IMG/VR virus record: IMGVR_UViG_3300050821_013430 | Coordinates: 310,001 to 374,000 of that record | Strand: one strand, 5' to 3' | DNA: 64,000 bases | Made by a program: the position numbers and the translations under genes | Shown: positions 1,766 through 64,000 of the stretch, in pieces | How positions within the stretch are numbered: position 1 is the stretch's first letter | Layout of the letters: every line of letters starts with the position of its first letter | The notes under the pieces: model-generated | What the model was told of the DNA's origin: nothing | What the model saw: the letters and a program-made list of their open reading frames with translations, nothing else | The model's database searches: none

Positions 1766-1783
1766 CGTTATTCCTTTGCTTAT

Positions 1784-3065: not shown

Positions 3066-3069
3066 CTAA
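1825..3069 (+). CDS. tnpB: TnpB RNA-guided endonuclease
   Basis: RuvC motifs VGLDFGLK, ICLE, HDRDLNAAQNI; CxxC...CxxC Zn finger; start 1825 or 1846. Confidence 0.93.
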   Translation: MVHPLRPMMTFKYKLYKSHKFGYLEALLPIACDIYNWVLLTKREAYSWDKTNISLYEMQKMVKDRRNESNSAWKMIGSQAVEQIIDRIYNGYERFFGDLKRGVKTSPPKLKKTPKYRSITFRQGRGYKLLDNNIIYISGQGWKGRGGKTFRFHKHRDWRGQIKTLTIKKNNLGEWFIYITTDYEGKLPEPTRTGKSVGLDFGLKTFLTTSDGQMIQSPQFFKQGLREIKRLSKLLNSKKKGSNNWERARLNLARAHESITNKRKDFHWKLAVKLCQQYEFICLEILNLKGMKALWGRKVSDLGFYQFVQILKWEAQKHGCRVIQIDRWYPSSKECGACWHINQSLSLRDREWNCVACNAHHDRDLNAAQNILRVGLATLAGADVRPLKPLRKQGKKAFGVDNTRSKRHKSLRIN

Positions 3070-20986: not shown

Positions 20987-23900
20987 TCAGTTCTCCATTG
21001 TCTTGGGCGTTTCGGTTTCTTCGGACTCGGATACTGTTTCAATCGACTCTTCCGCGCAGACACTTGCGCCTACGGTAGATTCCGCCTTCGGAATCCCCGA
21101 GAGGGATTCGCTAATCACCGGCAGCAACTGCTCCAAAGCCATCTCAATCATCGAGTTGCCGATGACCGAAAGACTCTGCACTCTAAACTCAGTGGCCAGT
21201 CGTTGCGCCTTTTGATGCTCAGAGAGTTTAGGGGCGTAGGTAAAGAGCAGACCCAGAATGGCGCTAACCAAAGCATCGCCAGCCTCCGTCTCCATCAATC
21301 CCTTGATGGATTCGACCATCTGACTGTTCTTGCCCTGTTGTGTTAGCATTCGGACAATCCCGGCCTTGGCCGCTGCATTGATCTGAGTTGCTGCAACTCG
21401 GTATAGAGCCGAGGATGCGTCTTCTTTGATCATGGCACCGAAAGGAGTACGATGGATAGCGACTGCTGCGGCCGTGGCCGCAACGGCTGCCGTTGCTTCT
21501 GGCACAAACTTGGGTTTGGTCTCTATCGGGGCGGTACCAGTAGAGGGACGGAAGCAATTGGCTTCGCTCTCCAATCCAGTGACGAACCAGGTGCGTCCGC
21601 CTTTGGCCTGTTCGACATATGCGGGATCGATGAAACCCGCGCCGCAGTCATTGTGCCATGAATGGCCTCTGGAATCGAGAGGAAGACTCAGCAGATAGCC
21701 AGGAGCGCTAGTGTTAGTCCTGATTCCAATGACGGTGGCTCGTACACTACTGCGAGTTTCGTCTCGCTTTGACTGCGAGTGATAGCAGTAATGCCCATCA
21801 TCCGCGACGAAGAGGTCTACCTTGTCGCCAACCTTGGTGGTCGGGATATACTTCGGCTTCTCTTCCTTCTTGACTTCGACCGGCTTGGGCTTTTCTTCGA
21901 GAGGCGGAGGGGCGTCTGGATGTACTTTCTTGAAGGCATCGGCGATGTTGATATACCAGCATCGAGTGCCTTTTTCCATCACCATCTTCTTGTAGACGAG
22001 ATCGACTTCTTTGAGGCGTCCCTGATAGTCAGATATTGGCCAACCGATGTTCTCCTTAGTCTCGAAGTTGACTAGGATCTGACCTTCACCGACACCGACT
22101 ACGGTTGCTAAAACGGTCTTTGGAACGGCTGCGTCGCTGGCGGTAATCGAACACAGACTTCCGTTGTTGTTTTGGTAGACCTCGATTACATCTCCCACCT
22201 TGACTCCAAGAACGGTCTTGGACTTGCGGAAGAACTCCTCGTCGTTGATCCAGTAAAAGGACTTGCCTTTGGACTTCTCCCGGTATTCGGGAGTGATCCA
22301 CGAAAACTGAGTCCCATAACTATGGCCATATCCCAACGAGGGATCCAGCATCGCCATCGGCTTACCATTCGTATCGAAGCCGCAGATGGTGGCCTTGATA
22401 GGAGACAGGGTGATATCCGGATCGTAACCCAGATCAACCAATCCTCCGGGGGAGCGGCGGAAGATCTCGATCTCATCGCCAACCTTCAATCCGTAGTTGC
22501 CTTCGAGGACATAAGTGACTCCCGTTTTGGCAGGCTCGGCCGGAGTTTCCGCGACAGGTTTCTCTTCCTTGGCTTCGGCCTTTTCAGTCTCCGTCTCGGC
22601 CTTCTCCTCTACTTCTTCATCAGGAGCGCTGGCTTCCGACTGACCCTCCTCGGCCTCAGTCTCTTCCGTTTTGGGCGAAGGGACTTTGGTGCCAAACAGG
22701 AAGCCAACCTTCTTGAAGGCATTTGCCGAAGAGAGTTCCCAGCAGTCCTTATCTTTGACCTCTTCCAAATATCGAGGGTCAATGTTGTACTGCGTACCAC
22801 CCTTAGAATGACCAGAGTTGACACCGGCTGCTTTCTTGTCAAAGACAGCCACCGGATAGCCATGAGTGCTGAAGGCGACGACGGTAGCACGGACGGGCGT
22901 CAATGACTTATCGCCTACCGATCCATCAGCGAGATACTTCTCGGTCTTCCGATCAATCGCGATCACATCTCCGATTCTGACCCCAAGAGAGGTTCTCTCG
23001 AAGGCTTTCTCTGAGTAGATGAATTGGAAGAACTTCTCATCATAGTCATCGACATCCAGACCGAAATCATTGGGGCTATGACGACAGTAATGGTCGTCGC
23101 TATCATAGGCTACGACTGGGCGTCCAGCCGAGAAGGCAACCACCTTGGCAGGAAGGGCCTCCTGATTGAGATCAGGCTCCTCGAACATATCGATGACTTT
23201 ACCGTCCGAGTCCTTGCGAAGATAGACCTTATCTCCGACTTTGAGACCCAAGGTCTTGTCCGTCTCACCGAGCGTAAACACACTATTGGCGGTCAGTCTA
23301 TGAATCGCAGCGTTTCGCTTCTGCGCTTCCCTGGCGTACTTGGGATCGATCTCGAAGTCGAGATACTCCTGATTGGTGTTTTGGAAGTCTTTGGAATCCA
23401 GCATGGCAAGCGGATTGCCATCGAAGAATCCAACGATGGTGGCCACTTCCGAGCCCACGGCGTCTTTCGCCAGGCTGGTTTCGTCAAAGCATTCGCCATC
23501 CTTATTGACCTTGATCTCGACCCGATCTCCGATCTTGAGTCCGAAAGAGTCCAACTGCGGCTTCTCGACCACTACGAAGTCAGCCCGATCAAACAGAGGC
23601 CAGAAGGACTTGTCCTTGAACTCTCCCTTGACCCTCTCCTCTATGCCGAGGTCTTCCATCGAGTCTTCGAGACCATCGTTGATGCTGGAATCGAAGGCGA
23701 CAAGGGGTCGATCCTCACTATCGAATCCAGCAACTACAGCCGGGATCCTCTCGGACTCCTTGTCCGCAGTGTAATCCTCGTTGATCAGATCTCCGTCCTC
23801 ATCGCGGTACATCTCGATCTTGTCGCCGATCTTGAGACCGAGCCTGATAGAGGGTTGACCCAAACGTCTGCAAAGACGCTTGTCAGTTTCGGGGCCGAAG

Positions 23901-24646
23901 CAAGACTTGCTATCCAACTCCCAGAGGGGGCCGTATTCCGATTCCTCGATATACTCCTCATCAATTTCGTAGTCTTCGCCGTGGTTGCCGTTGCCATCGT
24001 TGTTTTCCGCATCATCCAACAGAACGACCGGCTTGCCTTCCTTAGTGAAAGCGACAACAGTGGCAGTTTCGGTCTCGTACTCTTCGTCCCGCTCTTGATC
24101 ATCTTGGCAGAGATCACCGTCCTCATTGCGGAAGACTTCGACTCGATCTCCGATCTTGAGACCAAAGGTTTTCTCGGGGCTGTACTTGGGACTCACCTCG
24201 AAAGCATCCTTATGAATAAGGCCCCAGAAGGACTTGCCTTCGGTCTCGCCTTGGTACTGTTGGGCGACGTTGAGACCTGCTGGTGTTCTTGACAAACTGA
24301 GACTGCTGAAATCGAGATCCAACATGGTCAATACGGCGGGACCACTGAATCCAACGACAGTAGCGGTTGCGGGGGCGAAGGCCTCCTTGTTAGCCGGAGC
24401 GCCGTTGTCGCAAAGCAGATCCGTTCGATGTCGCCAGATCTTGACCCGATCTCCGACCTTGACTCCCAGTTTGGGAGAGGCATAGGACATGGCATCTTCG
24501 AGAGTCTCATAGCCGTTTCCGTCAGTAGACCCATCACATGCTTCGCAGATATTGAAGTAGCGTTCGCGGGCGGAGGAGCCATACTTGCCCCAATCCTTGC
24601 ACGGGGCTCCGCAAGCGCAACAGTTGGTCATAGGTTTAGTGGCCAT
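20987..24646 (-). CDS. 1219-aa protein: N-terminal Zn finger, 9 SH3-like repeats, helical C-domain
   Basis: Nine (G)(L/V)(K/R)(V/I)GD(R/K/V/E)(V/I) starts about 95 aa apart with AT(V/I)VG(F) and FW motifs. Confidence 0.85.
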   Translation of the reverse strand: MATKPMTNCCACGAPCKDWGKYGSSARERYFNICEACDGSTDGNGYETLEDAMSYASPKLGVKVGDRVKIWRHRTDLLCDNGAPANKEAFAPATATVVGFSGPAVLTMLDLDFSSLSLSRTPAGLNVAQQYQGETEGKSFWGLIHKDAFEVSPKYSPEKTFGLKIGDRVEVFRNEDGDLCQDDQERDEEYETETATVVAFTKEGKPVVLLDDAENNDGNGNHGEDYEIDEEYIEESEYGPLWELDSKSCFGPETDKRLCRRLGQPSIRLGLKIGDKIEMYRDEDGDLINEDYTADKESERIPAVVAGFDSEDRPLVAFDSSINDGLEDSMEDLGIEERVKGEFKDKSFWPLFDRADFVVVEKPQLDSFGLKIGDRVEIKVNKDGECFDETSLAKDAVGSEVATIVGFFDGNPLAMLDSKDFQNTNQEYLDFEIDPKYAREAQKRNAAIHRLTANSVFTLGETDKTLGLKVGDKVYLRKDSDGKVIDMFEEPDLNQEALPAKVVAFSAGRPVVAYDSDDHYCRHSPNDFGLDVDDYDEKFFQFIYSEKAFERTSLGVRIGDVIAIDRKTEKYLADGSVGDKSLTPVRATVVAFSTHGYPVAVFDKKAAGVNSGHSKGGTQYNIDPRYLEEVKDKDCWELSSANAFKKVGFLFGTKVPSPKTEETEAEEGQSEASAPDEEVEEKAETETEKAEAKEEKPVAETPAEPAKTGVTYVLEGNYGLKVGDEIEIFRRSPGGLVDLGYDPDITLSPIKATICGFDTNGKPMAMLDPSLGYGHSYGTQFSWITPEYREKSKGKSFYWINDEEFFRKSKTVLGVKVGDVIEVYQNNNGSLCSITASDAAVPKTVLATVVGVGEGQILVNFETKENIGWPISDYQGRLKEVDLVYKKMVMEKGTRCWYINIADAFKKVHPDAPPPLEEKPKPVEVKKEEKPKYIPTTKVGDKVDLFVADDGHYCYHSQSKRDETRSSVRATVIGIRTNTSAPGYLLSLPLDSRGHSWHNDCGAGFIDPAYVEQAKGGRTWFVTGLESEANCFRPSTGTAPIETKPKFVPEATAAVAATAAAVAIHRTPFGAMIKEDASSALYRVAATQINAAAKAGIVRMLTQQGKNSQMVESIKGLMETEAGDALVSAILGLLFTYAPKLSEHQKAQRLATEFRVQSLSVIGNSMIEMALEQLLPVISESLSGIPKAESTVGASVCAEESIETVSESEETETPKTMEN

Positions 24647-33139: not shown

Positions 33140-33694
33140 CTAATGCAACTCCGTCATCGCGATCAGCGCTTCGAGCGAAATGGGTTTGTATTCATGAACG
33201 TCAACACCTACGTTGATCATCTTGTCTTTCCGAAGCCATGCTTTGTGCACGTGGCCACAAATTAGGTAGCCACCATCGTTCTTCGGGCGCCACTCAGGAA
33301 AACGAGCCTCATGCCCTGTATCATCGTCCTTCATGTACGGTAGGTGATTGACAAGGAAACGCTCAACACGTGTCTCCATCATCACATCCTTGAATCCATA
33401 TCCGATGTATCGCTTGATGGCTTCTTCGTGGTTCTTACGACCAGCGAAAGTGCGATCATGGTTGCCAGAGATCAGGTACTTGATACCTTTGAGAAGGGGA
33501 ACAACGATCGGTACGATGCTCTCCTTCATAGAGAGGTCTCCCACATTATACACCACATCATCATCTTGCACTACGGCATTATAGCGGGCGACGAGTTCTC
33601 GGTTCATCTCGTCGATGTTGCGGAAGGGTCGCTCACTGTACTCGATAATCCGAGCATGCGATAGGTGGAAATCACTCGTAAACCTCGTTGTCAT
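33140..33694 (-). CDS. Calcineurin-like metallophosphoesterase
   Basis: SDFHLSH, VGDL, GNHD, H, GHVH. Confidence 0.9.
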   Translation of the reverse strand: MTTRFTSDFHLSHARIIEYSERPFRNIDEMNRELVARYNAVVQDDDVVYNVGDLSMKESIVPIVVPLLKGIKYLISGNHDRTFAGRKNHEEAIKRYIGYGFKDVMMETRVERFLVNHLPYMKDDDTGHEARFPEWRPKNDGGYLICGHVHKAWLRKDKMINVGVDVHEYKPISLEALIAMTELH

Positions 33695-34158
33695 CTCGTC
33701 ATCCACTCCCAACATCGTTGCCACCAGGGCTTCTGCGACGAATGAGCAACCAACGGCCCCTCAGGCTCATCTTGATCCTTAGGCTGGTTATCCACCCACT
33801 CTTTGATCGTTTCCTTCGACAAGGCAGGCAAGATGTACTTCGCCCGCAGTCTTTGTCCAATCGCATAGACGTCCTTGTCGTACTCTTTGCTGACGTCTTC
33901 CATCTTCATGTCGTCAAAGCCATACCAGATGGAATACACCTGCGAGTAGCCGAGCCTCACACCCAACAAGATCGAGAAGCAATCAACGCTGGTGTCGAAG
34001 TGTTCATTCTGGGAATTGAGTAGGGCGGTGATGGGGCAGCACTCATTGCCATTGTTGCTACTGAAACGCTTGTCGATGATCTTGCCACCAGCGGAGATAT
34101 GCTTGTCCGCCGCTTCGGTCAGCAGTCGTTCCAACTTGTTCAACTGTTCGGGCGTCAT
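33691..34158 (-). CDS. Hypothetical protein
   Basis: ORF track; CCP motif. Confidence 0.5.
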   Translation of the reverse strand: MTPEQLNKLERLLTEAADKHISAGGKIIDKRFSSNNGNECCPITALLNSQNEHFDTSVDCFSILLGVRLGYSQVYSIWYGFDDMKMEDVSKEYDKDVYAIGQRLRAKYILPALSKETIKEWVDNQPKDQDEPEGPLVAHSSQKPWWQRCWEWMTR

Positions 34159-46785: not shown

Positions 46786-46974
46786 TCAGTGAAACTGGCC
46801 ACACTGAGGGCAAAGAGTGCCTCGTTCATCGCGGAAGTACTGTACCAGACTGGGAACGAAGACGCCGTTTTCACAAGGCCAATGACACCAAGCGATCGGA
46901 TCATCGGCGTAATGAGAGCCATAGTTCTCACCACAAGCCAAACACTTGGTGTCCATCGGTATATTGACCTTCAT
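46786..46974 (-). CDS. CxQCxxxH-tail protein (CxxC..GxH subgroup)
   Basis: CLACGENYGSHY...CPQCGQFH*. Confidence 0.7.
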   Translation of the reverse strand: MKVNIPMDTKCLACGENYGSHYADDPIAWCHWPCENGVFVPSLVQYFRDERGTLCPQCGQFH

Positions 46975-47747
46975 TGCCGTTCCTTCTCCTCCAACTTGCC
47001 CCATTGCTCGTAGAAGTCTGCTGATAGATCGAGTTTGGTTGCCTTCGTCTTCATCATCTGATCAATGGCGTAAGCATACTCATTGATGAACCATTGCCGT
47101 TCGAAGGAGCGACCAGACTTGATCGCGAACTTGGACGTCTCCTTGCGGGACTTCCTTATCTCCCACTCCCCCATCATCCAATGACAAGCGTCTCGAATGA
47201 TCTCGCCGAGTCTGCATGCTGGCCCTACGAACACTTGACGCCACGCTTCCGATAGAGACCTGCGTTGCTTGCTCCATAGTCCCGAGAAGTCCCGATAGTC
47301 TATCGACCAGGTGTTAGAGTGAGGCAGGCGATACGAGACCAGAGGGGCTCCGAGTTTCACCATCGCTTGCTTCCACGCATCTCCATGTCCGTGCTCATGA
47401 GAGAGAAGATGGGCTACCTCATGCCGCATCAAACGCTCATCCCATATCTGCTCCAAGTGAGGGAAACAGATCACTCCGGATTCAGAATGAGCGTGGGCCA
47501 TATGCTCATCGTACTTCCACGCGGTCTCCACATCGTAGTAGCAACTGCCGATATGAATCACCTTCAACTCATCGAAGGCTTGCAGGTATCGAGGCCACTG
47601 CTCTCTTGATAGAGGGTATCGGTAAACGACTATCTTCGTTCGCAGAGGGTCGGGACTAATGGACAGCGTATACCATCCCCACCAAAGCAGGAACCACGCT
47701 GCGAGAAAGGCAGCAGATTGGACGATGATGCGGAGTTCGTAGGTCAT
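46971..47747 (-). CDS. SprT-like zinc metalloprotease with N-terminal TM
   Basis: LMRHEVAHLL...HGHGDAWKQAMVKLGA. Confidence 0.65.
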   Translation of the reverse strand: MTYELRIIVQSAAFLAAWFLLWWGWYTLSISPDPLRTKIVVYRYPLSREQWPRYLQAFDELKVIHIGSCYYDVETAWKYDEHMAHAHSESGVICFPHLEQIWDERLMRHEVAHLLSHEHGHGDAWKQAMVKLGAPLVSYRLPHSNTWSIDYRDFSGLWSKQRRSLSEAWRQVFVGPACRLGEIIRDACHWMMGEWEIRKSRKETSKFAIKSGRSFERQWFINEYAYAIDQMMKTKATKLDLSADFYEQWGKLEEKERQ

Positions 47748-48041
47748 AGGTACCTGACCTCAGTTGTCCTTCTTGGGAGTGTAGAGATCAGGAAAAGCGT
47801 TCGGCGTAGACACCATCGATCGGTAAAGCGGAAAGTGCTGTACCAGTTTGACGTCCCCATCTCGCTTCTCTTGCACCTTGGCCTTGGCTCCTTCGAGGCA
47901 GAGACCGAGACACTTGGCTACGCGTTCATCAGGCGTCATTGGAACTTCTCTTTCAGCCACATCGCCAGTAGCGTGCATCGTACCCGAAGCCACACCTTGA
48001 ACAGACTCCAACGAGACCAATGCTTGGTCAGCTCAGACCAC

Positions 48042-48299
48042 TTACGATGGCCCATGAATCCCTCCGCACTGCGGACACAATAGCGACTCGATTCGTTTGG
48101 CTGGTGGAGAGCCACGGCCCTGCCACGCAAACCCCTGTCTCTTGGAATATCCGTCATCATCGTAGTCCTGTACGTCTTTGATCAGATGGCCATGCTTGAC
48201 ATAACAAGCACGACACCAGATGATGTCTTCGTCATTGGCATGACAAGTGGCCAACGAATTGGTGATGACTGCTTGGCAGAGATTGCAGGATGCGCTCAT
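48042..48299 (-). CDS. CxQCxxxH-tail protein, family B
   Basis: CNLCQAVI...WCRAC...YDDDG...CPQCGGIHGPS*. Confidence 0.75.
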   Translation of the reverse strand: MSASCNLCQAVITNSLATCHANDEDIIWCRACYVKHGHLIKDVQDYDDDGYSKRQGFAWQGRGSPPAKRIESLLCPQCGGIHGPS

Positions 48300-48544
48300 A
48301 GGTGCAGCCTTCCACATTGGGAACAGCACAATGGCTGAATACTCCACCAAGTCGTTGCATTGCGACTCCACCAAGCAAACCCGTGTCTGCTGGAAAAGCC
48401 ATCGTCATCATAGGTCAGGAAGTCCTTGATCAGATGGTAGCGCTCCACGAAACAGGTACGGCACCAATTGACGATGTTGGAATGATCGAAAGCCAATGGC
48501 CCAATGATGGTGGCTTGGCAGATCTGACAAGTAGCAACACTCAT
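48296..48544 (-). CDS. CxQCxxxH-tail protein, family B
   Basis: CQICQATI...WCRTC...YDDDG...CSQCGRLHL*; tandem paralog. Confidence 0.75.
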   Translation of the reverse strand: MSVATCQICQATIIGPLAFDHSNIVNWCRTCFVERYHLIKDFLTYDDDGFSSRHGFAWWSRNATTWWSIQPLCCSQCGRLHL

Positions 48545-48801
48545 AGATGAATCCTTCCACATTGAGGACAAACCTCAGGGTCTTGATCGAAGAAGTTGCC
48601 TGGACTTTTGTTCGGCAGCAACTCTCTCACTCGTGCGTCCAAACATCCGAGCACGCCCGCCACTTCTTTGGCCTGATGCCAGGTCAGCGGCTCAGGATTC
48701 TTAGGGTCTTGCAAGCCGTTATGAAAGGGGAAACGACGGTTAGTCCAACGATAACTGCCATCATAGTTCTTGACCCAAACTCCAAACACTCGTGTACTCA
48801 T
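48541..48801 (-). CDS. CxQCxxxH-tail protein (family C, FxVW..RWT)
   Basis: VFGVW...RWT...RELLP..SPGNFFDQDPEVCPQCGRIHL*. Confidence 0.8.
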   Translation of the reverse strand: MSTRVFGVWVKNYDGSYRWTNRRFPFHNGLQDPKNPEPLTWHQAKEVAGVLGCLDARVRELLPNKSPGNFFDQDPEVCPQCGRIHL

Positions 48802-48832
48802 AGATGCACCTTTCTGGCACTAACGAAGTTGA

Positions 48833-48946
48833 TGCGGCTCTTTGATTGGGAGCCGCAAGACCAATCTTCCCTGGCCGGAGAAGAGGGTGCATCGAGATAC
48901 CGGAGCGACCGGCGCGAGCCTAACACGTAGCAACATCCCAATCAAA
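48833..48946 (-). ncRNA. Stem-closed structured element upstream of family C gene
   Basis: tttgattggga/tcccaatcaaa 11 bp; competing tgcggctc/gagccgca hairpin. Confidence 0.45.
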
Positions 48947-49398
48947 CCGGCAAAGAGTGTTGGCTTCTGCCAGCCCGCAATTGGAACGCTTCTCTCGATG
49001 ACGACAGGTTGTCCGGCTATTCACGTACCGGACTGAAAGGCTACTCGACCCAGAGCGGTTAGTCGTTCGCCTCAACGGATGGACTGCGTGTCTATCGGAC
49101 GCCATGCTTGACCTAAGAGCATGGGAGGACTTGGGAAAATTGGCGAGGAAGCAAGAGCCCTAATATCCATGTTTGAGAAGGAAGGACTCTTTGGCTCGCC
49201 TAACATTGACGGTGGGGAAGCAGAGACCGTAGGTTCATTATCTTCGTGCCCATAAGAGACCGTTCCTTTCTGAGTGAATTGAAGAGGCTTCCGGCCAACT
49301 TGTCGATTGCCCACCAGCCATCCAATCCCCATCACAGAGATTGGCGTGCCGGGCCCAAGGCCCGGTGCTAATGGATCGGTTTACCGGCGAAGCCTCAG

Positions 49399-49481
49399 TT
49401 GGAGATGATGGAATCGAACCATGCGACCTCCCTCTTTCGCATTGCTGCGACGAGGGTGCTCTGCCACTGAGCTAATCTCCA
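49399..49481 (-). tRNA. tRNA-like RNA with anticodon loop replaced by a GCAA-capped hairpin; no encoded CCA
   Basis: Acceptor TGGAGAT/ATCTCCA, D-arm GCTC-AGTGGCA-GAGC, AC stem CCCTC/GAGGG, variable AGGTC, T-loop TTCGATT. Confidence 0.8.
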
Positions 49482-49688
49482 AAGCGCCCCGTGTGCTCAT
49501 TGAGCATGATTGTCTCTCCTAAACCCACGGGGCCACGGGTCAAGAGGTTAGTCGAGGTTAGAGTGGCGACGCTCGACCTTCGTTCTTTCAGCCACCATAG
49601 CAACCGGCATTCTGCCGATGATAGCACCCATCTACTTATGGCCAAGGCCTCGCCAGCGGCTTTCATGGGTGCGGCGTCTTGTAGTCTC

Positions 49689-49889
49689 TCAATGGTACCT
49701 GCTGCATTGAGGACAACGATCTACATCCTTGCGGGCGGTTCTCCCCGAATCGATGAAGGATGTTCCTTCCATGAACCTGTTCTTGAATCGTGGCCCGTTA
49801 TTCGCATCTTGTGGACACCACCCACTCCTGCAAGAGTGTTCTCCTCTTCGGAAACTGCACAGATTGCAAACGGCATCGCGAGTGTTCAA
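49689..49889 (-). CDS. CxQCxxxH-tail protein (CxxC..GxH subgroup)
   Basis: TTG start; CNLC..RGEH...CPQCSRYH*. Confidence 0.7.
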   Translation of the reverse strand: MNTRDAVCNLCSFRRGEHSCRSGWCPQDANNGPRFKNRFMEGTSFIDSGRTARKDVDRCPQCSRYH

Positions 49890-50107
49890 TGATACCTCCC
49901 ACACTGAGGACATCTCGGTACGCCTATGGTAGCCTCAGTCTTACCGGAAGAGACGAAGGCGGTAATGGCATACCCAGATTCGGGGTAAGTGTCTTTGGCA
50001 GACGGGCACACGGTAGTGCCAGCGGTCTTGCTGCCATGAGAGTAGTGCTTGCCGCGAGCGAACAAGCAAACAGAGCAGACGGTATCGTAAGGACTATCGT
50101 CGATCAT
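49886..50107 (-). CDS. CxQCxxxH-tail protein (CxxC..GxH subgroup)
   Basis: CSVC..RGKH...CPQCGRYH*. Confidence 0.75.
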   Translation of the reverse strand: MIDDSPYDTVCSVCLFARGKHYSHGSKTAGTTVCPSAKDTYPESGYAITAFVSSGKTEATIGVPRCPQCGRYH

Positions 50108-50343
50108 GGGTGCAGGTTTCCGCACTGCGGACAGTTTGGATCGGTCTCGAAAAAGCGACCTCGCGATCCATCAGCGAGCACTTCCCTAACTTCACACCTT
50201 GGATGCGGCGTGATCTCCTTCACCCACTTCGCTGCTTCTTGGTAGGTAAGTCGTCTTACACTCCCAGGGCCCTGGCCGTAGTTAGTCCAACGCTCAGGCC
50301 CGTTTGCGGGATAGCACCAGACATTGAAGACGATGCTACTCAT
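50104..50343 (-). CDS. CxQCxxxH-tail protein, family C
   Basis: VFNVW...RWT...REVLADG..G.FF...CPQCGNLHP*. Confidence 0.8.
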   Translation of the reverse strand: MSSIVFNVWCYPANGPERWTNYGQGPGSVRRLTYQEAAKWVKEITPHPRCEVREVLADGSRGRFFETDPNCPQCGNLHP

Positions 50344-50585
50344 GGGTGCAACTCTCCACATTGATGGCAAGTGGGGTTTTGCGTGAAGACGTTGCCTGGG
50401 CTGCCATCCGTAAGGACTTCCCTGATCACCGGATGACGATCATTGCTGATCGAAGCCATAAGTCTCGCTGCCTCAACATAGGTCAGTCGGTTTGGGTTTT
50501 CAGGATCGTTGCCACCAGCGATAGTCCAACGAGAGACTGAGGTATCGTTCTTCTTCGGGGTTTGCAACCAGACATTGAATCGCAT
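50340..50585 (-). CDS. CxQCxxxH-tail protein, family C
   Basis: MRFNVW...RWT...REVLTDGSPG...CHQCGELHP*. Confidence 0.8.
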   Translation of the reverse strand: MRFNVWLQTPKKNDTSVSRWTIAGGNDPENPNRLTYVEAARLMASISNDRHPVIREVLTDGSPGNVFTQNPTCHQCGELHP

Positions 50586-50614
50586 GTGTATCTCCTAAGA
50601 TGGGAAAGGGATTC

Positions 50615-50691
50615 CAGAGAGACCAACGGACTAATTGAGAGCGTGTCGCGGGGGAGCGGAGACACACCCTCATACACCGTCAGTCTCTCTG
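50615..50691 (-). ncRNA. Stem-closed structured element upstream of family C gene
   Basis: cagagagac/gtctctctg closing stem with inner acgg/ccgt and gtgtc/gacac stems. Confidence 0.4.
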
Positions 50692-50846
50692 AAAACTGGG
50701 GTCAGCCTGCATAGGTCGTGAGATCGCTACACGTCTCTTGCAGGTCGATCATATCGGCCTCTCGTTCCGTTGAGCCTATCTCAGTACGGGCCTCGATCAT
50801 CTCCTTGACCCGACGAATGGCATCGGTGATGATCTTGATCTCCTGC

Positions 50847-51104
50847 TCAGTGAGCATCGGTAGAGATCGGCTCGTAAGCGATCGACTCGGCGTTGATGAC
50901 TCCTTCCGGAATCAGTCCTTCGATCTCTTCGAGGTACTTGGCACCCTCTGCCTCGGCGAGAGCCAACAACTCTTCCATGTCCTCTTTCCATTCGGGCATA
51001 CCCTTAGGGAAACGAGCATCGAGGCCTCGCAGGATGGCGATGGCGCTCTTGGCCGCAGTTTCAATCAGGGTCTTGGTCTGTTCGCGTTCAGTCGTTGTAA
51101 GCAT
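50847..51104 (-). CDS. Hypothetical protein
   Basis: AAGGA SD. Confidence 0.5.
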   Translation of the reverse strand: MLTTTEREQTKTLIETAAKSAIAILRGLDARFPKGMPEWKEDMEELLALAEAEGAKYLEEIEGLIPEGVINAESIAYEPISTDAH

Positions 51105-51122
51105 CGTTAGTGTCCTTTCAGG

Positions 51123-51740
51123 TTATGGGTTAGAGGTATTGTCTGCTTCATCGGCCAGGAGTTTGGCCTCGTCGAGGAGAAGGATAACCAGATCGTACAG
51201 ACCGTTGTATCTCTCACCCGAGTTTGCGGGAGTTCGTGCCCTGATTGAATCGCGGGCACGGAGAATGCCGAGTTGTGCCTGCGTTCTCTCTTCGTCGGTG
51301 AGAGTGTCTTGCTCGTCCGGACAGGCACTATCTTGTTGAGAGTATGGAGGCAACATCCCTTCCAAGAGTTTGACCAACTGCTCCATGTATCCCTGGCTCG
51401 ACTCTTCCAGCAACTCGAACCAAGAGAAGATGGCAAGCCTTCGCTGCTCTTCGTTGGAATTGCGGTCGATGATGCTTTTCAGCGTGAAAAGCAAGCCTTC
51501 CCCGACAGCCGCGATGCTCATCTTGGTCATCAGTCTTTCCGACCAAGTAAGTGGAGAACTCTGAGCCTCCACTTGCTGCTCGGCCTCAATCAGGTCGAGC
51601 AACTTTTGGAAGCGCTCGTTGCAATACTGTCCAATCTCGCACAAGGCTTCTTGCCTCTGCTGGGGAGGACGGGACTTGAGACTCGCGTAAAGCGAATCAA
51701 CGCAAGTGTCAATGGTCTTCTTCTCGTGCTCGGTAATCAT
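51123..51740 (-). CDS. Hypothetical helical protein
   Basis: AGGAG SD. Confidence 0.55.
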   Translation of the reverse strand: MITEHEKKTIDTCVDSLYASLKSRPPQQRQEALCEIGQYCNERFQKLLDLIEAEQQVEAQSSPLTWSERLMTKMSIAAVGEGLLFTLKSIIDRNSNEEQRRLAIFSWFELLEESSQGYMEQLVKLLEGMLPPYSQQDSACPDEQDTLTDEERTQAQLGILRARDSIRARTPANSGERYNGLYDLVILLLDEAKLLADEADNTSNP

Positions 51741-51920
51741 GGTAGTCTCCTTATGGCTTCATTACACAGTGGTAGAGATGGGCAGACGGGAGACACCCAT
51801 CCGGCCCCGACATGCAGTCGTAGGTATGAGCCATGGTCTTCCCATTACCATCCGCCCAAAAGCAGACAGCGCTGAGAAGGAGGTAGAAGTAGAGGCCATA
51901 CTTGACCACTTGACGATCGT

Positions 51921-52283
51921 TCATGACGGTTGCTCCTCTGAAACGGTTTCGACTATTGCTGCCGTTGCCTCATCACCCAATACCACGGGCGCTTCGACAA
52001 CCTTCTCCTTGATGCGGAGGTCTTTCATCAACTTGGCGTGGTCTTCGGCATTGGGCATGACAGGGCAACCCATACGAAACCACGCTTTCCTTCTCGTGTG
52101 ATAGTTCGGATGATTGACCGTCTCATCCGGCTTCTTTGGATTGAAGATGGCCAACGGGTTGCTCATGTCGAGGAATCGTTCGGGGGGCAGGGCCCCGGAA
52201 GCGATGGCTCGCTCCGCTTGCATGCGCGTGTACTGACGAGCGGGTTTGACTTTGACGCGGTTCTTCTTCTTGCTTTCGGACAT
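51921..52283 (-). CDS. Hypothetical protein
   Basis: GGAGG SD. Confidence 0.6.
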   Translation of the reverse strand: MSESKKKNRVKVKPARQYTRMQAERAIASGALPPERFLDMSNPLAIFNPKKPDETVNHPNYHTRRKAWFRMGCPVMPNAEDHAKLMKDLRIKEKVVEAPVVLGDEATAAIVETVSEEQPS

Positions 52284-52318
52284 GGCTTCCTCCTGGCCTT
52301 AGCCAATTGGGTTTGGAA

Positions 52319-52564
52319 TTACGGATGTATCTGACCACACTGAGGGCAACAACCCGGATCTTGTTCGTAGACTTGTCCGCAGGTATTGTCGGGTAGCAGT
52401 TCTCGAATGCTGAGTTCGTGCTGTTTCCATCCAGCACGACGGAGAGACGCCATCAATATCTCGGCTTCCTGATAGGACTTTGGAATAGGGGTTTCTTGGG
52501 ACTGACCACTATTAGTCCATCGATTGGCTTCGGGGATTGATACCCAGACATTGAAAACCATCAA
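52319..52564 (-). CDS. CxQCxxxH-tail protein, family C
   Basis: VFNVW...RWT...RELLPD...QDP.CCPQCGQIHP*. Confidence 0.8.
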   Translation of the reverse strand: MMVFNVWVSIPEANRWTNSGQSQETPIPKSYQEAEILMASLRRAGWKQHELSIRELLPDNTCGQVYEQDPGCCPQCGQIHP

Positions 52565-52794
52565 TGCACCTCACCACATTGAGGACAATAATCGGGGTCT
52601 TGGTCGTAGAAGGCGCCGGGAGATCCATCGGGAAGCACTTCTCGAATGCGAGGTTTCAACTCAACAAGGATGCCTCCTAACTTCCCCTTGACTTCTTTCC
52701 AGGTGAAGGGTTTTGGCGAGTTGGCAAACTGGCAACCAGAAGCAATCGTCCAGCGTTCCTTGCTACCATCGATGACCCAGATATTGAAGCGCAT
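52561..52794 (-). CDS. CxQCxxxH-tail protein, family C
   Basis: MRFNIW...RWT...REVLPDGSPG.FYDQDPDYCPQCGEVH*. Confidence 0.8.
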   Translation of the reverse strand: MRFNIWVIDGSKERWTIASGCQFANSPKPFTWKEVKGKLGGILVELKPRIREVLPDGSPGAFYDQDPDYCPQCGEVH

Positions 52795-52814
52795 AGATGA
52801 CCTCGTTGATTGAA

Positions 52815-52911
52815 GAGTGTCGTGCTGTGGCTACTTCGCTCGGTTTCGGGCATGAAACCGCTAGTCCTACTCCATCCATGACGATGCGGCCTGGCAGCAA
52901 ACACGACACTC
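52815..52911 (-). ncRNA. Stem-closed structured element upstream of family C gene
   Basis: gagtgtcgtg/cacgacactc 10 bp; inner cggtttc/gaaaccg hairpin. Confidence 0.45.
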
Positions 52912-52913
52912 AG

Positions 52914-53019
52914 TGGAATCCCCTTGAATCGAACAAGGACTCTAACCTCCTACTTGCCCCTTTTACACCGCGGAGGGACTTTCGGGAATCGATTAGAGAG
53001 GCTGTACCATCCTGATCCC
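52914..53019 (-). ncRNA. tRNA-like RNA resembling the tRNA-like domain of tmRNA (G3:U70, A73)
   Basis: GGGATC/GATTCC acceptor plus A; T-arm CCTTG-TTCGATT-CAAGG; 8-bp CTCTAATC/GGTTAGAG stem enclosing a 43-nt insert. Confidence 0.55.
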
Positions 53020-53241
53020 GTAAGCCCCCACCGTTGTTTTACGGGCTGAGGGGGCGATAGGCCCGGATGCACCGTTGCCAGTGCATGCAGCCTTCGTTGC
53101 CTTTACAGGCAAGCCCGGCTATCGGCCCGCGCCGGTATTTACATACCATGCGGAGAGGGCCAGTGCCATTGGATTGAAGTCATCTCACCAATGGCTTGCA
53201 ACATCTTTACTGCGGGGAGTTGCCAGACCCCTATTCCAGAA

Positions 53242-53667
53242 TCAGACCGCTTCCGCAGTCTTGCTCGACTTCTTCTCGACCGGCATATCCTCGCCATGCT
53301 CCATGTAATAGGCGAGGCTTTCTTCGTTGCGAATCGTGCAACCGCCTTTTCCACGACTAATGCGGAAGCGCGGATTGCTGCGCATACGCTCGACCACGCG
53401 ACGCTCGATCTCCTGAATCGTATCCGCCGAGGTCTCGATCTCCTTCATGGCAAGACCACGCCACACGGGAACCGTATAGCCCTTGTCATGATTCGCATCG
53501 GCGAGCTGATTCAGCACCTCGTCGATTCGCTCATCATTGGCAGCCTGCAACTCCAACCACGAATCGAGTTGCGACTCAAACTTGGCGATCGTCGCATTGC
53601 GATCAATCTCCTTAGTCTGATCATCACGCTCAAAATTGCTCACATCAAACGAAAACGTTGCGCTCAT
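53242..53667 (-). CDS. Hypothetical protein
   Basis: AGGA SD; basic C-terminal RISRGKGG hairpin. Confidence 0.6.
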   Translation of the reverse strand: MSATFSFDVSNFERDDQTKEIDRNATIAKFESQLDSWLELQAANDERIDEVLNQLADANHDKGYTVPVWRGLAMKEIETSADTIQEIERRVVERMRSNPRFRISRGKGGCTIRNEESLAYYMEHGEDMPVEKKSSKTAEAV

Positions 53668-53768
53668 GTTCCTATCCTGCTTTCTCTGTCTTGTTGTTGC
53701 CGTATCCTTGGGCCACGCATAATCACACCATGCGATCAGTTTGGCTTGCCAGCGAACGAGAGCGAACC

Positions 53769-54092
53769 TTAGCGTTCGTAATCTCGATCGCGTCGTCTGT
53801 CCTCATACCTTTCACGAGGAGGGGCTGCGGTCTTATTCACATCCTCCTCAGCAATGGGAGCGAAGCCAATCTTGGGCGTCGCAACCCAACGATTGGATCG
53901 TACGGTAGGAGACGGGGTGGAGCCAACGAAGAGGCTGATAGGAATCTCCGTCAGACCCACATAAGAGAGACCCTTCTGTCCCTCCTTATAGAAGACCTTA
54001 CACACCAAGCAGTTCTTGTTGACCGTCGAGTTTCTGACGGGCTTGACAAAACGATCCTGATCGATCTCATCGCGGAATAACTGGTTGAGCAT
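53769..54092 (-). CDS. Hypothetical protein with CxxC
   Basis: TAATG overlap. Confidence 0.5.
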   Translation of the reverse strand: MLNQLFRDEIDQDRFVKPVRNSTVNKNCLVCKVFYKEGQKGLSYVGLTEIPISLFVGSTPSPTVRSNRWVATPKIGFAPIAEEDVNKTAAPPRERYEDRRRDRDYER

Positions 54093-54499
54093 TACCGCTT
54101 CTCCTTCTTCTTGGTCTTCTTCTTGTCGCTCTTCTTCTCGGTTTTCTTGGCAGCCTTCTTCGCAGCCTTGGCTTCCTTCTTGGCCTGCTTTGCTATGCGC
54201 GCTTCCGCCTCTTCCAATGCCACCCTATCGGCATCTTCCTTGGCCCGTCTGCGAATCTCGACTTCCAATTCATCCGCCAATTTGAGCGCTTCCCCTGCGA
54301 GGTCTCGCAAGTGATCGGCATACAACTCACGGCTCAATGCAACGGAAGCCTCGCCGTTGTTGTAGTCAACGAGGAAGGACTCGGTAGAAAGAGTGATCTC
54401 CGCATGGTCGGTGCCAAACTGATTCCGAGTCTTGCGAAGTACCATGAGGGTATTACCCCAGCCGGGAGTGAATCGGATCTCATCGAGTTCGTTCGTCAT
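54092..54499 (-). CDS. Hypothetical protein with Lys/Ala-rich tail
   Basis: AGGA SD before MTNELD. Confidence 0.55.
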   Translation of the reverse strand: MTNELDEIRFTPGWGNTLMVLRKTRNQFGTDHAEITLSTESFLVDYNNGEASVALSRELYADHLRDLAGEALKLADELEVEIRRRAKEDADRVALEEAEARIAKQAKKEAKAAKKAAKKTEKKSDKKKTKKKEKR

Positions 54500-54792
54500 T
54501 GGAGTGTTCCTTGATGTAGTTGACCACATTGCGGGCAACATTGGAGGGCTTGTTGCCATTGCTGTCCGCGACAACAATCGGTAAAGGTATAGCCATCTTG
54601 TTCGAAGAGAGTCGTATCGGCACTACCCAACAGAGACTGAATAGCCGAATGCTTGCCACAGTCCGCGCACAAGAAGAAGAAGGGGGTCGATAGATGACCG
54701 GCATTGTTCTCATCCACCATCAGAGACTTGGAACATCCGACGCAGGGCTCTTGGTAGAGCGGCGTACCATACTTGGCTGATCGTGCAGTCAT
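54496..54792 (-). CDS. CxQCxxxH-tail protein, family B
   Basis: CVGC...CADC...CCPQCGQLHQGTLQ*. Confidence 0.7.
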   Translation of the reverse strand: MTARSAKYGTPLYQEPCVGCSKSLMVDENNAGHLSTPFFFLCADCGKHSAIQSLLGSADTTLFEQDGYTFTDCCRGQQWQQALQCCPQCGQLHQGTLQ

Positions 54793-57900: not shown

Positions 57901-58669
57901 TCTCCTCTTACACCTCACGAGGCCAAGAAGAAGAACCGAGAGGCAGGAAGACCGAACACGGTCTGAGGATAGCATACTGCAAACACAATGCTACCTTCGC
58001 ACCCTTACCCATCAAGCGCTCATCAGAGCAGTGGGTTCTGCCAGAACTTGTTTAGGCGGACTTTTTGCCCATCTGAATGTATCGGATGAGGAAGGTTGCG
58101 ACCAGAAAGAATCCGGCCAGAAACACTATCATCGGATAGGTTGGCGTGAGATGGAACAACCTAACTATGAGGTAGGAACTCAACGCACCGCCGAAAAAAC
58201 CGGAAGTCGTTTCTTGGAAGGCGGAGAGAAACGCAGTCTTGAATCGAGAAGTGTTCATGTGATGTCCTTTCGTGTCTAAGTGTCCGACGCCTTGGAATTG
58301 AACCAAGCTCGAAGATCCGGGGTTATAAGCCTCGCGGCACTACCTTGTGCCTTGCGTCGGTAAGTCTATCTCTTCATCAACAGCATCGCCCCAAGCACCA
58401 CCGCTGCCAATCCAACCGGCACTACCAGATACCTTACCCACCAACGCGTCCTCGGAAAGACGACATGGTTGAGAACCGGCGCTACAAAGAACATGATCGC
58501 GAACACGACGATGCTTTGCTTATCCATTAGTCCATTCTCCCACGCGTCTTATACAGCCTCACCACACTCTTCCCAATCAGCAGCAACCATGTTGTCGAAC
58601 CGCTGATCCATTCGATCTTCCGAATCCCCAACCACTCGAAACCGAAAGTCTGTATGGTAAGATGTGGGC

Positions 58670-63264: not shown

Positions 63265-63395
63265 GTGATATACTCTCCGAATGGTTTTAGCCGTTCGAGA
63301 TTGTGCCATCAACGCTGAGAGCCTGCTTGCCACGCTTGCGCGTGGGCTTCGCAGGTCTTACCTCAACTCCGACAAGGGTTGATATCCCAACCCCG
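63265..63395 (-). ncRNA. Putative omega-RNA / right end of second TnpB element
   Basis: Similar to 2945-3066; terminal hairpin then TCAC. Confidence 0.55.
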
Positions 63396-64000
63396 TTCTT
63401 GCTTTTCAGCAAGGACATACCTTGTGTATGAATGTTGATCGCGGCATTCGCATCACGATCGTGATGCGTGCCGCAGTTTGAGCAATCCCATTCTCGATCT
63501 TTTAGGTCGAGAGTCTCATTGATATGCTGGCAGCAAGAACAAGTCTTGCTGCTCGGATAGAAACGATCAATGAAGATCACCTTTGAGCCATACTTGCTGG
63601 CCATATAGACCAGTTTCTGAACGAAGGAGTAGAGGCCTAAGTCTCCAATCTTGCGACTACATAAGGCTTGCATCCCTTTCAGGTTGAGGGTCTCTAAGCA
63701 AATTGTCTCGTAGGTTTGCACCAATTGGTAAGCCAACTGCCAGTGAAAGTCTTTTCGTTGGTTGGCGATGTCGTCATGAGCCTTGGCAAGCGCACGAAGT
63801 GCGCGCTTGCTATTCCCACTACCCTTGACCTTACTATCTAACTGCTGATTGAGTCTCCTGATCTTCTTGCTGCTTTGCTTGAAGAACAAGGGAGATTGGA
63901 TCGCTGTACCATCACTTCCTGTCAGGAAGTTTTTGAGCCCGAAGTCGAAACCGACGCTTTTACCCGATCTGGTTTCTTGTTTGGACGCTTCCTGAAAGTC
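63287..64000 (-). CDS. tnpB: TnpB RNA-guided endonuclease (5' part outside window)
   Basis: In frame to window edge: VGFDFGLKNF, ICLE, HDRDANAAINI, Zn finger. Confidence 0.93.
   Translation of the reverse strand, partial: DFQEASKQETRSGKSVGFDFGLKNFLTGSDGTAIQSPLFFKQSSKKIRRLNQQLDSKVKGSGNSKRALRALAKAHDDIANQRKDFHWQLAYQLVQTYETICLETLNLKGMQALCSRKIGDLGLYSFVQKLVYMASKYGSKVIFIDRFYPSSKTCSCCQHINETLDLKDREWDCSNCGTHHDRDANAAINIHTQGMSLLKSKNGVGISTLVGVEVRPAKPTRKRGKQALSVDGTISNG

What the first reader, a model, noticed from the sequence alone, without database searches (positions are those of the whole stretch)
52914..53019. 106-nt RNA resembling a tmRNA tRNA-like domain without a message
Seen in sequence: a 6-bp acceptor with G3:U70 and discriminator A, a perfect T-arm, no canonical D-arm, a 1-nt connector, and an 8-bp stem enclosing 43 nt. 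Established knowledge: G3:U70 and A73 specify alanylation; the tmRNA TLD lacks a D-stem and binds SmpB; some mitochondrial tmRNAs lack the mRNA part. Inference: a mini-tmRNA or SmpB/AlaRS decoy that alters ribosome rescue. Both tRNA-like RNAs are followed by ACTGAG, a possible shared processing cue (weak).
Basis: partly seen in the sequence, partly recalled or inferred. Interest (0 to 1): 0.65.

Follow-up and report, generated by a model that had tools for sequence, protein, structure and literature searches.

The report
Anticodon-less tRNA mimic in huge phage
A 106-base stretch between two genes of a 472-kb soil phage folds like the top half of a tRNA (acceptor stem and T-arm, no anticodon); it is most likely a tRNA-derived RNA-processing signal rather than a miniature tmRNA, but no expression data or diverged relatives exist to settle this.

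Summary
The described fold is real. It lies on the minus strand, 53019 to 52914. It has a 6-bp acceptor stem with G3:U70, discriminator A, a perfect T-arm with a canonical T-loop, no D-stem, and an 8-bp stem enclosing 43 nt. A strict tRNA minihelix of this kind turns up in only 0.7% of shuffled windows.

It is neither a tRNA nor a tmRNA by any model: ARAGORN and Rfam, including the tmRNA families, give no hit.

The element sits in a 447-nt spacer between same-strand genes of a 472,749-bp soil phage. A second module 3.5 kb away has the same layout: GC hairpin, short leader, tRNA-like RNA, A/CU, a GAG...CUC stem-closed domain, then UUCAAU. That second RNA has a tRNA-Ile-like body whose anticodon loop is replaced by a GCAA-capped hairpin.

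Both therefore keep what RNase P, RNase Z and CCA-adding enzyme read, and lack what decoding needs. My best reading, at about 0.35, is a tRNA-derived processing element like plant-mitochondrial t-elements, which releases a stable non-decoding RNA.

G3:U70 with A73 makes alanylation conceivable, but nothing supports a link to tmRNA or SmpB.

All available copies are nearly identical, and no RNA data exist.

The parts
53024..53055 (-). GC-rich hairpin (GCCCCC...GGGGGC) that ends 4 nt before the tRNA-like 5' end. It would be the 3'-terminal hairpin of the upstream RNA after RNase P cleavage.
   Evidence: Sequence; fold of the upstream 222 nt; constrained fold. Module 2 has an analogous CCCCGUG...CACGGGG hairpin ending 5 nt before its tRNA-like RNA.
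53020..53023 (-). 4-nt leader UUAC between the hairpin and G1 (the putative RNase P site is between 53020 and 53019).
   Evidence: Sequence; inference.
52914..53019 (-). The 106-nt tRNA top-half mimic (the finding).
   Evidence: Fold; strict minihelix scan; 100% identical in L003 and L007.
53014..53019 (-). Acceptor 5' strand GGGAUC (G1-C6).
52999..53013 (-). 15-nt unpaired D-region A7-U21 (AGGAUGGUACAGCCU). AUGGUACAGC aligns with the D-loop plus 3' D-stem (AGUGGCAGAGC) of element 2, so the GG is probably the G18/G19 elbow remnant. The 5' D-stem strand is missing.
   Evidence: Alignment of the two modules; fold.
52940..52998 (-). 59-nt irregular hairpin replacing the anticodon arm and variable region. 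It has an 8-bp basal stem (22-29/73-80), then 3 bp, then 6 bp with a 12-nt loop.
52921..52939 (-). T-arm: (U)CCUUG-UUCGAUU-CAAGG(G).
52914..52920 (-). Acceptor 3' strand GAUUCC plus discriminator A (52914). No encoded CCA.
52815..52911 (-). Stem-closed Y-shaped domain that starts 2 nt (CU) after the discriminator. It has a 12-bp closing stem GAGUGUCGUGUU/AGCACGACACUC.
   Evidence: Fold z = -3.37. Counterpart in module 2: z = -4.08.
52809..52814 (-). UUCAAU directly after the closing stem. Exact CUCUUCAAU occurs only here and at 49278-49286 in the window.
52792..52804 (-). GAGG ribosome-binding site (52804-52801) and ATG (52794) of the 77-aa CPQCG-family gene.
   Evidence: JGI gene calls show the same 447-nt gap.
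49399..49481 (-). Element 2. A tRNA-Ile-like body with a 17-nt 'anticodon loop' forming a UCGCA-GCAA-UGCGA hairpin. A73 is followed by CUGAG.
   Evidence: RF00005 39.7 bits; ARAGORN -i; 72.6% identity to a Serratia phage tRNA-Ile; fold.
49278..49396 (-). Module 2 downstream domain (closing stem GAGGCUUC...GAAGCCUC, 49396-49284) plus UUCAAU (49283-49278).

Best explanation
The element is a tRNA-derived 'top-half' mimic embedded in a polycistronic phage transcript. It keeps exactly the parts that tRNA end-processing enzymes read: the 12-bp acceptor/T-arm stack, the T-loop and a D-loop GG for the elbow. It has lost the parts needed for decoding.

The proposed mechanism is inferred; none of it is shown:
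1. Host or phage RNase P cuts before G1 (53019).
2. RNase Z or a 3' trimming pathway cuts after A73 (52914).
3. The upstream mRNA is left ending in the GC hairpin (53055-53024).
4. The downstream mRNA for the 77-aa gene is left beginning with the 12-bp stem (from 52911).
5. Both ends are then protected from exonucleases and from 5'-end-dependent decay.
6. The released 106-nt RNA would be a stable by-product or effector. It could receive CCA and, because of G3:U70/A73, possibly alanine.

The same logic applies to the paralogous module at 49481-49278. In function this is the phage counterpart of plant-mitochondrial t-elements.
For: - A canonical T-arm plus acceptor is found in only 0.7% of shuffles under strict criteria.
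- The element is on the same strand as, and lies between, two same-strand genes. No terminator or promoter consensus is present in the spacer.
- No cloverleaf can be recovered by any single internal deletion. It is therefore not simply an interrupted tRNA.
- The D-region still aligns with the D-loop of element 2.
- A second module 3.5 kb away shares the order hairpin / 4-5 nt / tRNA-like / A-CU / GAG...stem...CUC / UUCAAU.
- Between the shared motifs the two modules differ completely in sequence, yet both closing stems are perfect.
- The composite pattern occurs only at these two sites in all of IMG/VR. In the metagenome collection it occurs in this phage plus one unrelated chance match.
- Element 2 is a bona fide tRNA body (39.7 bits) with its anticodon loop closed into a GNRA hairpin. 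Both RNAs are thus non-decoding yet processable.
- The two genuine tRNAs of the window sit in short spacers without such flanks.
- t-elements with a conserved T-arm and non-canonical remainder are cut by RNase P and RNase Z and get partial CCA (PMC1920247).
Against: - There is no RNA evidence at all: no RNA run holds the sequence.
- There is no covariation. All four independent copies are identical across the 106-nt element, with one substitution and one indel elsewhere in the spacer of L003.
- The 106 nt alone are not more stable than shuffles (z = -0.46).
- In context an alternative hairpin wins by 4-6 kcal/mol.
- The spacer's z-score (-4.06 by the tool, -2.84 in my re-run) is matched by 2 of 8 coding controls.
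- In module 2 the downstream domain is followed only by a 17-codon ORF and about 450 nt more non-coding sequence, so 'protecting the 5' end of the next gene' fits less well there.
- N-1 of element 1 is C, not the U that bacterial RNase P prefers (my own knowledge).
Confidence: 0.35

Rival explanations
1. One reading: an alanine-accepting mini-tmRNA, or an SmpB/AlaRS/EF-Tu decoy, that interferes with ribosome rescue.
For: - The architecture equals a tmRNA tRNA-like domain: unpaired D-region, a helix in place of the anticodon arm, and a T-arm.
- G3:U70, G2:C71 and A73 are the alanine identity set (established knowledge).
Against: - No tmRNA call by ARAGORN at a 90% or higher threshold.
- No Rfam tmRNA or mt-tmRNA hit at E up to 10.
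- No tag reading frame.
- By eye against my remembered tmRNA D-loop consensus, only GGAU is shared.
- The paralogous element 2 has G3:C70, so the function the two modules share cannot be alanylation.
- A G:U at one given pair of a random stem is expected in roughly 5-10% of cases.
- No SmpB was seen in the 64 kb.
Confidence: 0.08
2. A non-functional relic. A tRNA gene in a fast-turnover tRNA/homing-endonuclease region lost its D-stem and anticodon arm in one replacement event, and the intact top half is simply young.
For: - The region is rich in HNH genes, and these vary between nearly identical phages.
- tRNA-Ile(UAU) is swapped for another allele in L003.
- D-loop remnant similarity to element 2.
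- There are no diverged copies that would show purifying selection.
Against: - Two separate modules both keep perfect acceptor and T pairing while their flanking stems have diverged completely. That implies age plus maintenance.
- In element 2 the anticodon loop is not decayed but neatly closed by a 5-bp GNRA-capped helix.
- Conserved CUGAG and CUCUUCAAU motifs frame both modules.
Confidence: 0.22
3. A decoy or sponge for tRNA-binding host defence proteins (anticodon nucleases and other tRNA-targeting toxins) or for tRNA-modifying enzymes. It would be a tRNA body that binds them but cannot be cut in an anticodon loop.
For: - Both RNAs lack an anticodon loop.
- The window encodes an RNA ligase and a metallophosphoesterase, which is typical tRNA-repair equipment (PMC7824862).
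Against: - Element 1 lacks the whole D/anticodon half that such nucleases recognise.
- No defence or counter-defence gene is linked to the spacer.
- The idea is purely inferential.
Confidence: 0.1
4. A chance resemblance. The spacer really folds into the alternative long hairpin, and the T-arm look-alike is a coincidence. In that hairpin GGGAUC pairs with the internal GAUUCCC, and GGGGGCUU pairs with AAGUCCCU.
For: - The alternative fold is 4.1-10.4 kcal/mol better in context.
- GAUUCC occurs twice.
- The loose motif is common in shuffles.
- A 6-bp complement within 160 nt of a given 3' strand has a chance of about 0.13 (my estimate).
Against: - The strict motif occurs in only 0.7% of shuffles.
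- Its position and strand fit an expressed element.
- It shares T-loop, A-CUGAG and CUCUUCAAU with a certain tRNA derivative.
- Real tRNAs fail the same context-folding test.
- The L003 variant breaks the long-range helix of the minimum-energy fold but keeps the local hairpin.
Confidence: 0.1

Closest known systems
tmRNA tRNA-like domain (SsrA), including the message-less mitochondrial tmRNAs of jakobids
   Same: - Acceptor with G3:U70 and discriminator A.
- Canonical T-arm.
- D-region without a stem.
- A long helix in the place of the anticodon arm, joined almost directly to the T-arm.
   Different: - No tag reading frame or pseudoknots.
- No match to any tmRNA model.
- The D-region sequence is not the tmRNA consensus (by eye, from memory).
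- No encoded CCA.
- Only 6 acceptor pairs.
- It sits inside a gene spacer with a paralogue that lacks G3:U70.
t-elements of plant mitochondria (tRNA-like processing signals; PMC1920247)
   Same: - Conserved T-arm motif and acceptor-like stem with a non-canonical remainder.
- Embedded in mRNA precursors next to genes.
- No decoding function.
- Expected substrates of RNase P, RNase Z and CCA-adding enzyme.
   Different: - Different domain of life and no homology.
- Here processing is not demonstrated.
- The phage modules add conserved flanking hairpins and the CU-GAG...CUC-UUCAAU frame.
Canonical phage tRNAs, and element 2 of this window
   Same: - Identical T-loop GUUCGAUUC.
- A73.
- The same 3' trailer.
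- A D-loop remnant.
   Different: - Element 1 has no D-stem, anticodon arm, U8 or variable loop.
- It is not detected by ARAGORN or RF00005.
Phage T4 stable RNAs C and D (species 1 and 2) in the tRNA cluster (from my own memory; not tested here)
   Same: Small non-decoding RNAs that are co-transcribed and processed with tRNAs in a large phage; function unknown.
   Different: T4's lie inside a tRNA array, whereas these lie between protein genes.
Bacterial and phage YrlA (Y RNA) tRNA-like module; mascRNA of MALAT1
   Same: tRNA elbow mimicry without decoding. mascRNA is released by RNase P and RNase Z from a longer RNA.
   Different: - YrlA has its ends in the Ro-binding stem and a closed acceptor (PMC4201824).
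- No Rfam hit, and no Ro gene in the window.
- mascRNA is eukaryotic.

Membership tests
tmRNA (SsrA), incl. mt-tmRNA | Acceptor stem with G3:U70 and discriminator A | tested here: met
   G3:U103 and A106. CCA is not encoded.
tmRNA (SsrA), incl. mt-tmRNA | T-arm with a T-loop; D-region without a stem | tested here: met
tmRNA (SsrA), incl. mt-tmRNA | mRNA-like domain: resume codon, tag ORF, pseudoknots | tested here: not met
   Only 43 nt are enclosed. ARAGORN tmRNA mode finds nothing at a 90% or higher threshold, and at 80% gives noise-level calls only. (mt-tmRNAs also lack this domain.)
tmRNA (SsrA), incl. mt-tmRNA | Match to a family covariance model (Rfam tmRNA, alpha/beta/cyano tmRNA, mt-tmRNA) | tested here: not met
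   No hit at E up to 10 on 136 nt or on 2 kb. These models penalise the missing middle, so this negative is weak.
tmRNA (SsrA), incl. mt-tmRNA | Conserved D-loop sequence and SmpB binding; alanylation | not testable with these tools
   By eye only GGAU is shared with the consensus I remember. This needs gel shift and charging assays.
Canonical tRNA | Cloverleaf with D-arm, anticodon arm and 7-nt anticodon loop | tested here: not met
   ARAGORN with or without introns finds nothing. RF00005 gives no hit. No single deletion restores a tRNA.
t-element-like processing signal | Conserved T-arm motif (GGTTCRANYCC type) plus an acceptor-like stem, with a non-canonical rest | tested here: met
   The core GTTCGATTC is present with a 5-bp Watson-Crick stem. 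The outer G/C of the 11-mer are U/A here. The motif definition is from PMC1920247.
t-element-like processing signal | Lies within a transcript, on the same strand as the flanking genes | tested here: inconclusive
   Same strand, a 447-nt spacer, and no terminator-like site. Transcription itself was not observed.
t-element-like processing signal | RNA ends coincide with RNase P and RNase Z sites; non-encoded C/CCA at the 3' end | not testable with these tools
   No RNA run holds the sequence.
YrlA / Y RNA | Ro-binding terminal stem, closed acceptor, Rfam model, linked Ro gene | tested here: not met
   No Rfam hit. The ends are at the acceptor. No TROVE protein was found among the ORFs scanned.
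attP copy of a host tRNA/tmRNA 3' end | Exact identity of the T-arm plus acceptor 3' strand with a bacterial tRNA or tmRNA gene | tested here: not met
   The 25-mer is absent from the representative genomes of 185,579 species. No integrase lies nearby.

The most novel reading that the evidence does not exclude
A huge phage makes an anticodon-less, alanine-chargeable 'top-half' tRNA. Once released by RNase P and RNase Z and given CCA, it acts in trans on the translation or rescue machinery (SmpB, EF-Tu, AlaRS, or as a non-ribosomal Ala donor). That would make it a message-less tmRNA-like effector of viral origin.
Probability: 0.06. Interest if true: 0.8.

Novelty: new variant of a known kind. 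Interest (0 to 1): 0.35.

Why it matters
If the two modules are processed as proposed, this would be a bacterial-virus example of tRNA punctuation by degenerate tRNA mimics. So far this is documented mainly in organelles. Here it comes with a recognisable cassette of hairpin, mimic and stem that could be searched for in other giant phages. It could also be reused as a compact RNA-processing or insulation part.

It would also show that phage 'tRNA-like' sequences missed by tRNA finders can be functional non-decoding RNAs. If the RNA is in addition charged with alanine, it would be a new kind of viral tRNA-like effector.

As things stand it is a well-formed but unverified motif known from a single phage lineage.

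Tried and rejected
- tmRNA: ARAGORN tmRNA mode at 95, 90, 80 and 70% thresholds gave nothing above noise.
- Rfam: gathering thresholds on the window, and E-value mode on 2 kb, on 136 nt and on both flanks, gave no relevant family.
- tRNA with an intron or insertion: ARAGORN -i found nothing, and 1995 single-deletion variants gave none detectable.
- attP or host tRNA copy: the 25-mer is absent from the GTDB representative genomes.
- Search for diverged homologues:
  - IMG/VR by protein, by protein alignment and by DNA patterns returned only the source contig.
  - INPHARED by megablast and blastn returned nothing.
  - The 5.8-billion-protein search with the flanking 141-aa protein found 2 close clusters.
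  - The exhaustive profile search with the CPQCG family found distant homologues whose contigs lack the spacer.
  - The metagenome collection searched by protein returned nothing; searched by composite DNA pattern it returned only the same phage plus one chance match inside a coding region.
- Variation between copies: L003, L007 and the contigs of three other metagenomes are 99.5-100% identical in the spacer, so no covariation test was possible.
- Expression: no RNA-seq run holds the sequence, so ends could not be mapped.
- Structure by z-score alone: rejected as evidence after coding controls reached similar values.
- Context folding as a test of the tRNA-like fold: rejected because genuine tRNAs fail it.
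- Plus-strand ORFs in the spacer (72 and 77 aa): no family hit, and not called by JGI.
- ACTGAG as a general tRNA trailer: the two true tRNAs do not have it, and the hexamer is not enriched in the window (52 observed against 40.8 expected).

Full report
**Where it is**

The window is part of IMGVR_UViG_3300050821_013430, a 472,749-bp viral contig from a soil metagenome. Most of its genes read on the minus strand. The window carries typical giant-phage equipment:
- a ClpB-like ATPase;
- an RNA ligase and a metallophosphoesterase;
- HNH and LAGLIDADG endonucleases;
- TnpB.

The finding lies in a 447-nt spacer (52795-53241). This spacer separates a 141-aa gene (53242-53667) from a 77-aa gene (52561-52794), both on the minus strand. 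Neither neighbour has a Pfam or PHROG family.

**The observation**

- Acceptor: G1:C, G2:C, G3:U, A4:U, U5:A, C6:G.
- T-arm: CCUUG / UUCGAUU / CAAGG.
- Discriminator A, with no encoded CCA.
- A 15-nt unpaired stretch where the D-arm should be.
- An 8-bp stem (22-29/73-80) enclosing 43 nt, one nucleotete before the T-stem.

If U81 pairs with G99, the acceptor/T stack is 6+6 = 12 bp, the same length as the canonical 7+5.

Under loose criteria such a motif is common in shuffled sequence, about 0.7 per window. Under the canonical T-arm consensus it occurs in 0.7% of 1000 shuffles, and the real window has two: tRNA-Ile and this element.

The 106 nt are not unusually stable as a whole (z = -0.46).

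**What it is not**

- ARAGORN finds only tRNA-Leu(CAA) and tRNA-Ile(UAU) in the window.
- With introns allowed it adds one more, at 49398-49481, but still not this element.
- In tmRNA mode it finds nothing at a 90% or higher threshold. At 80% it gives 20 noise-level calls spread over the window.
- Rfam gives no tRNA, tmRNA, mt-tmRNA, Y RNA or other hit, even at E up to 10 on just 136 nt. The flanks match nothing either.
- None of 1995 single internal deletions turns it into a detectable tRNA.
- The T-arm plus acceptor 25-mer is absent from the representative genomes of 185,579 species. It is therefore not a copy of a known host tRNA or tmRNA 3' end, as a phage attachment site would be.
- The plus-strand ORFs in the spacer have no family and were not called as genes.

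**The second module**

- It scores 39.7 bits against the tRNA model, above the gathering score of 29.
- It aligns along its length with a Serratia phage tRNA-Ile.
- Its anticodon loop is 17 nt long and folds into a 5-bp helix capped by GCAA. It cannot decode as it stands.

Both RNAs sit in long spacers with the same layout:
1. A GC-rich hairpin ends 4-5 nt before the 5' end.
2. The tRNA-like RNA follows and ends in discriminator A.
3. Then come two nucleotides, CU.
4. Then comes a strongly structured Y-shaped domain whose closing stem begins GAG and ends CUC (z = -3.37 and -4.08).
5. UUCAAU follows directly.

Exact CUCUUCAAU occurs only at these two places in the window. The composite pattern (T-loop, 11 nt, ACTGAG, 85-115 nt, CTCTTCAAT) occurs only at these two sites in IMG/VR. 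In the metagenome collection it occurs only in the same phage plus one unrelated match inside a coding region.

Between the shared motifs the two modules have no sequence similarity, yet both closing stems are perfect. The acceptor and T stems of the two RNAs also differ while each still pairs.

It consists of the discriminator, a 2-nt spacer and the first three pairs of the next helix.

The D-region of element 1 (AUGGUACAGC) aligns with the D-loop and 3' D-stem of element 2 (AGUGGCAGAGC), with the 5' D-stem strand missing. Element 1 thus looks like a tRNA that kept acceptor, T-arm and elbow and had its lower half replaced.

**Caveats on structure**

- The tool gives the 447-nt spacer z = -4.06 on the minus strand and -1.54 on the plus strand.
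- My re-run gave -2.84, and 2 of 8 coding controls reached -3 or lower. I give this little weight.
- When the upstream 35 nt are present, an alternative hairpin is 4.1-10.4 kcal/mol better than the tRNA-like fold. In it GGGAUC pairs with an internal GAUUCCC and GGGGGCUU pairs with AAGUCCCU.
- The tRNA-like fold dominates only if the RNA starts at G1.
- Genuine tRNA-Leu and element 2 also fail this context test, so the test is neutral.
- The L003 variant (G to C plus an inserted C near the 5' end of the spacer) breaks the long-range helix of the minimum-energy fold but preserves a local hairpin.

**Comparative and expression data**

Four independent assemblies carry the spacer:
- the source contig;
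- L003, from another JGI sample;
- L007/L128, from a third sample;
- short contigs from two further soil runs.

All are 99.5-100% identical in the spacer, and the 106-nt element is identical in every copy. The phages are 97-99% identical overall. No diverged homologue could be retrieved from any collection. No RNA run holds the sequence. Covariation and end mapping, the two decisive tests, were therefore impossible.

**Interpretation**

What the two RNAs share is what RNase P, RNase Z and CCA-adding enzyme recognise. What they share in context is a stable hairpin just upstream and a stable stem just downstream. They do not share an amino-acid identity: element 2 has G3:C70 and U1:A72.

The most economical mechanism is tRNA-style punctuation of a polycistronic transcript. 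The flanking helices would become protective mRNA ends, and a stable non-decoding RNA would be released. This is what plant-mitochondrial t-elements do (PMC1920247). I put this at about 0.35.

The rivals and my estimates:
- a young non-functional relic in a region of rapid tRNA and endonuclease turnover, 0.22;
- a decoy for tRNA-binding defence proteins, 0.10;
- a chance resemblance, 0.10;
- something else, the remainder.

However, membership in the tmRNA family fails every test that could be run. A G:U at the third pair is also not rare by chance.

**Verdict**

This is a genuine, well-formed tRNA top-half mimic in a giant soil phage. It belongs to a two-copy cassette not described in Rfam. 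Its function is inferred only. It is of moderate interest, and it becomes testable with a simple processing assay.

Noticed in passing
window 46786-54600, minus strand (e.g. 52561-52794, 52319-52564, 50340-50585, 50104-50370, 49886-50125, 49689-49913, 48541-48801, 48296-48571, 48042-48374): At least ten paralogous small ORFs (74-110 aa) end in CPQCG-x-H and fall into two subtypes. They have no Pfam or PHROG family. A profile of four members finds small homologues in other metagenomes. It also finds giant proteins (3280 and 1864 aa) that carry 14-18 matching stretches. Both tRNA-like modules are embedded in this gene family.
   Followed up: partly
window 49399-49481 (-): A tRNA-Ile-like gene (RF00005 39.7 bits) whose anticodon loop is replaced by a 17-nt segment forming a 5-bp helix with a GCAA tetraloop. 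ARAGORN reads it as 'tRNA-Ser(cga) with a 10-nt intron'. There is no bulge-helix-bulge motif. It is identical in L007.
   Followed up: partly
window 58282-58360 (-) versus L003 1091-1182: Two phages that are 97-99% identical carry clearly different tRNA-Ile(UAU) genes at the same place (79 nt against 92 nt, with different acceptor stems and variable arm). The surrounding locus is about 800 nt in the window and 119 nt in L003.
   Followed up: partly
L003 5614-7000: Two HNH endonuclease genes are inserted between the 141-aa gene and the spacer in one phage strain. They are absent from the window and from L007, and homology resumes about 8 nt into the spacer.
   Followed up: partly
window 10075-10734 (-) and 33140-33724 (-): An RNA ligase (PF09414) and a calcineurin-like phosphoesterase, possibly an RNA or tRNA repair set.
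   Followed up: no
window 1756-3069 (+) and 63287-63889 (-): A full-length TnpB (OrfB_IS605 plus the Cas12f1-like TNB domain) and a second copy that looks truncated. No associated guide RNA was looked for.
   Followed up: no
window 20987-24646 (-): A 1219-aa ORF whose only Pfam signal is summed weak matches to the MazE/AbrB-type (SpoVT-AbrB) fold (55.7 bits in total, with no single significant stretch).
   Followed up: no
window 53080-53195 (-): The upstream half of the spacer is a row of adjacent hairpins 1-2 nt apart. Two of them are capped by GUAA tetraloops (GGUAU-GUAA-AUACC and UUGCCU-GUAA-AGGCAA). It has no Rfam match.
   Followed up: partly
window, whole: The Rfam gathering-threshold scan of the full window reported no tRNA at all. 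Yet ARAGORN finds two, and a short-range scan gives 39.7 bits for element 2. The fast filters evidently miss these phage tRNAs.
   Followed up: no
L005 130-165 and 662-720: In a distant relative's contig, a roughly 35-nt motif (AGAYGCGCGTGTYYTRGCTACGAYRGTGARGRAAC) recurs upstream of genes. It may be a phage promoter or leader motif.
   Followed up: no
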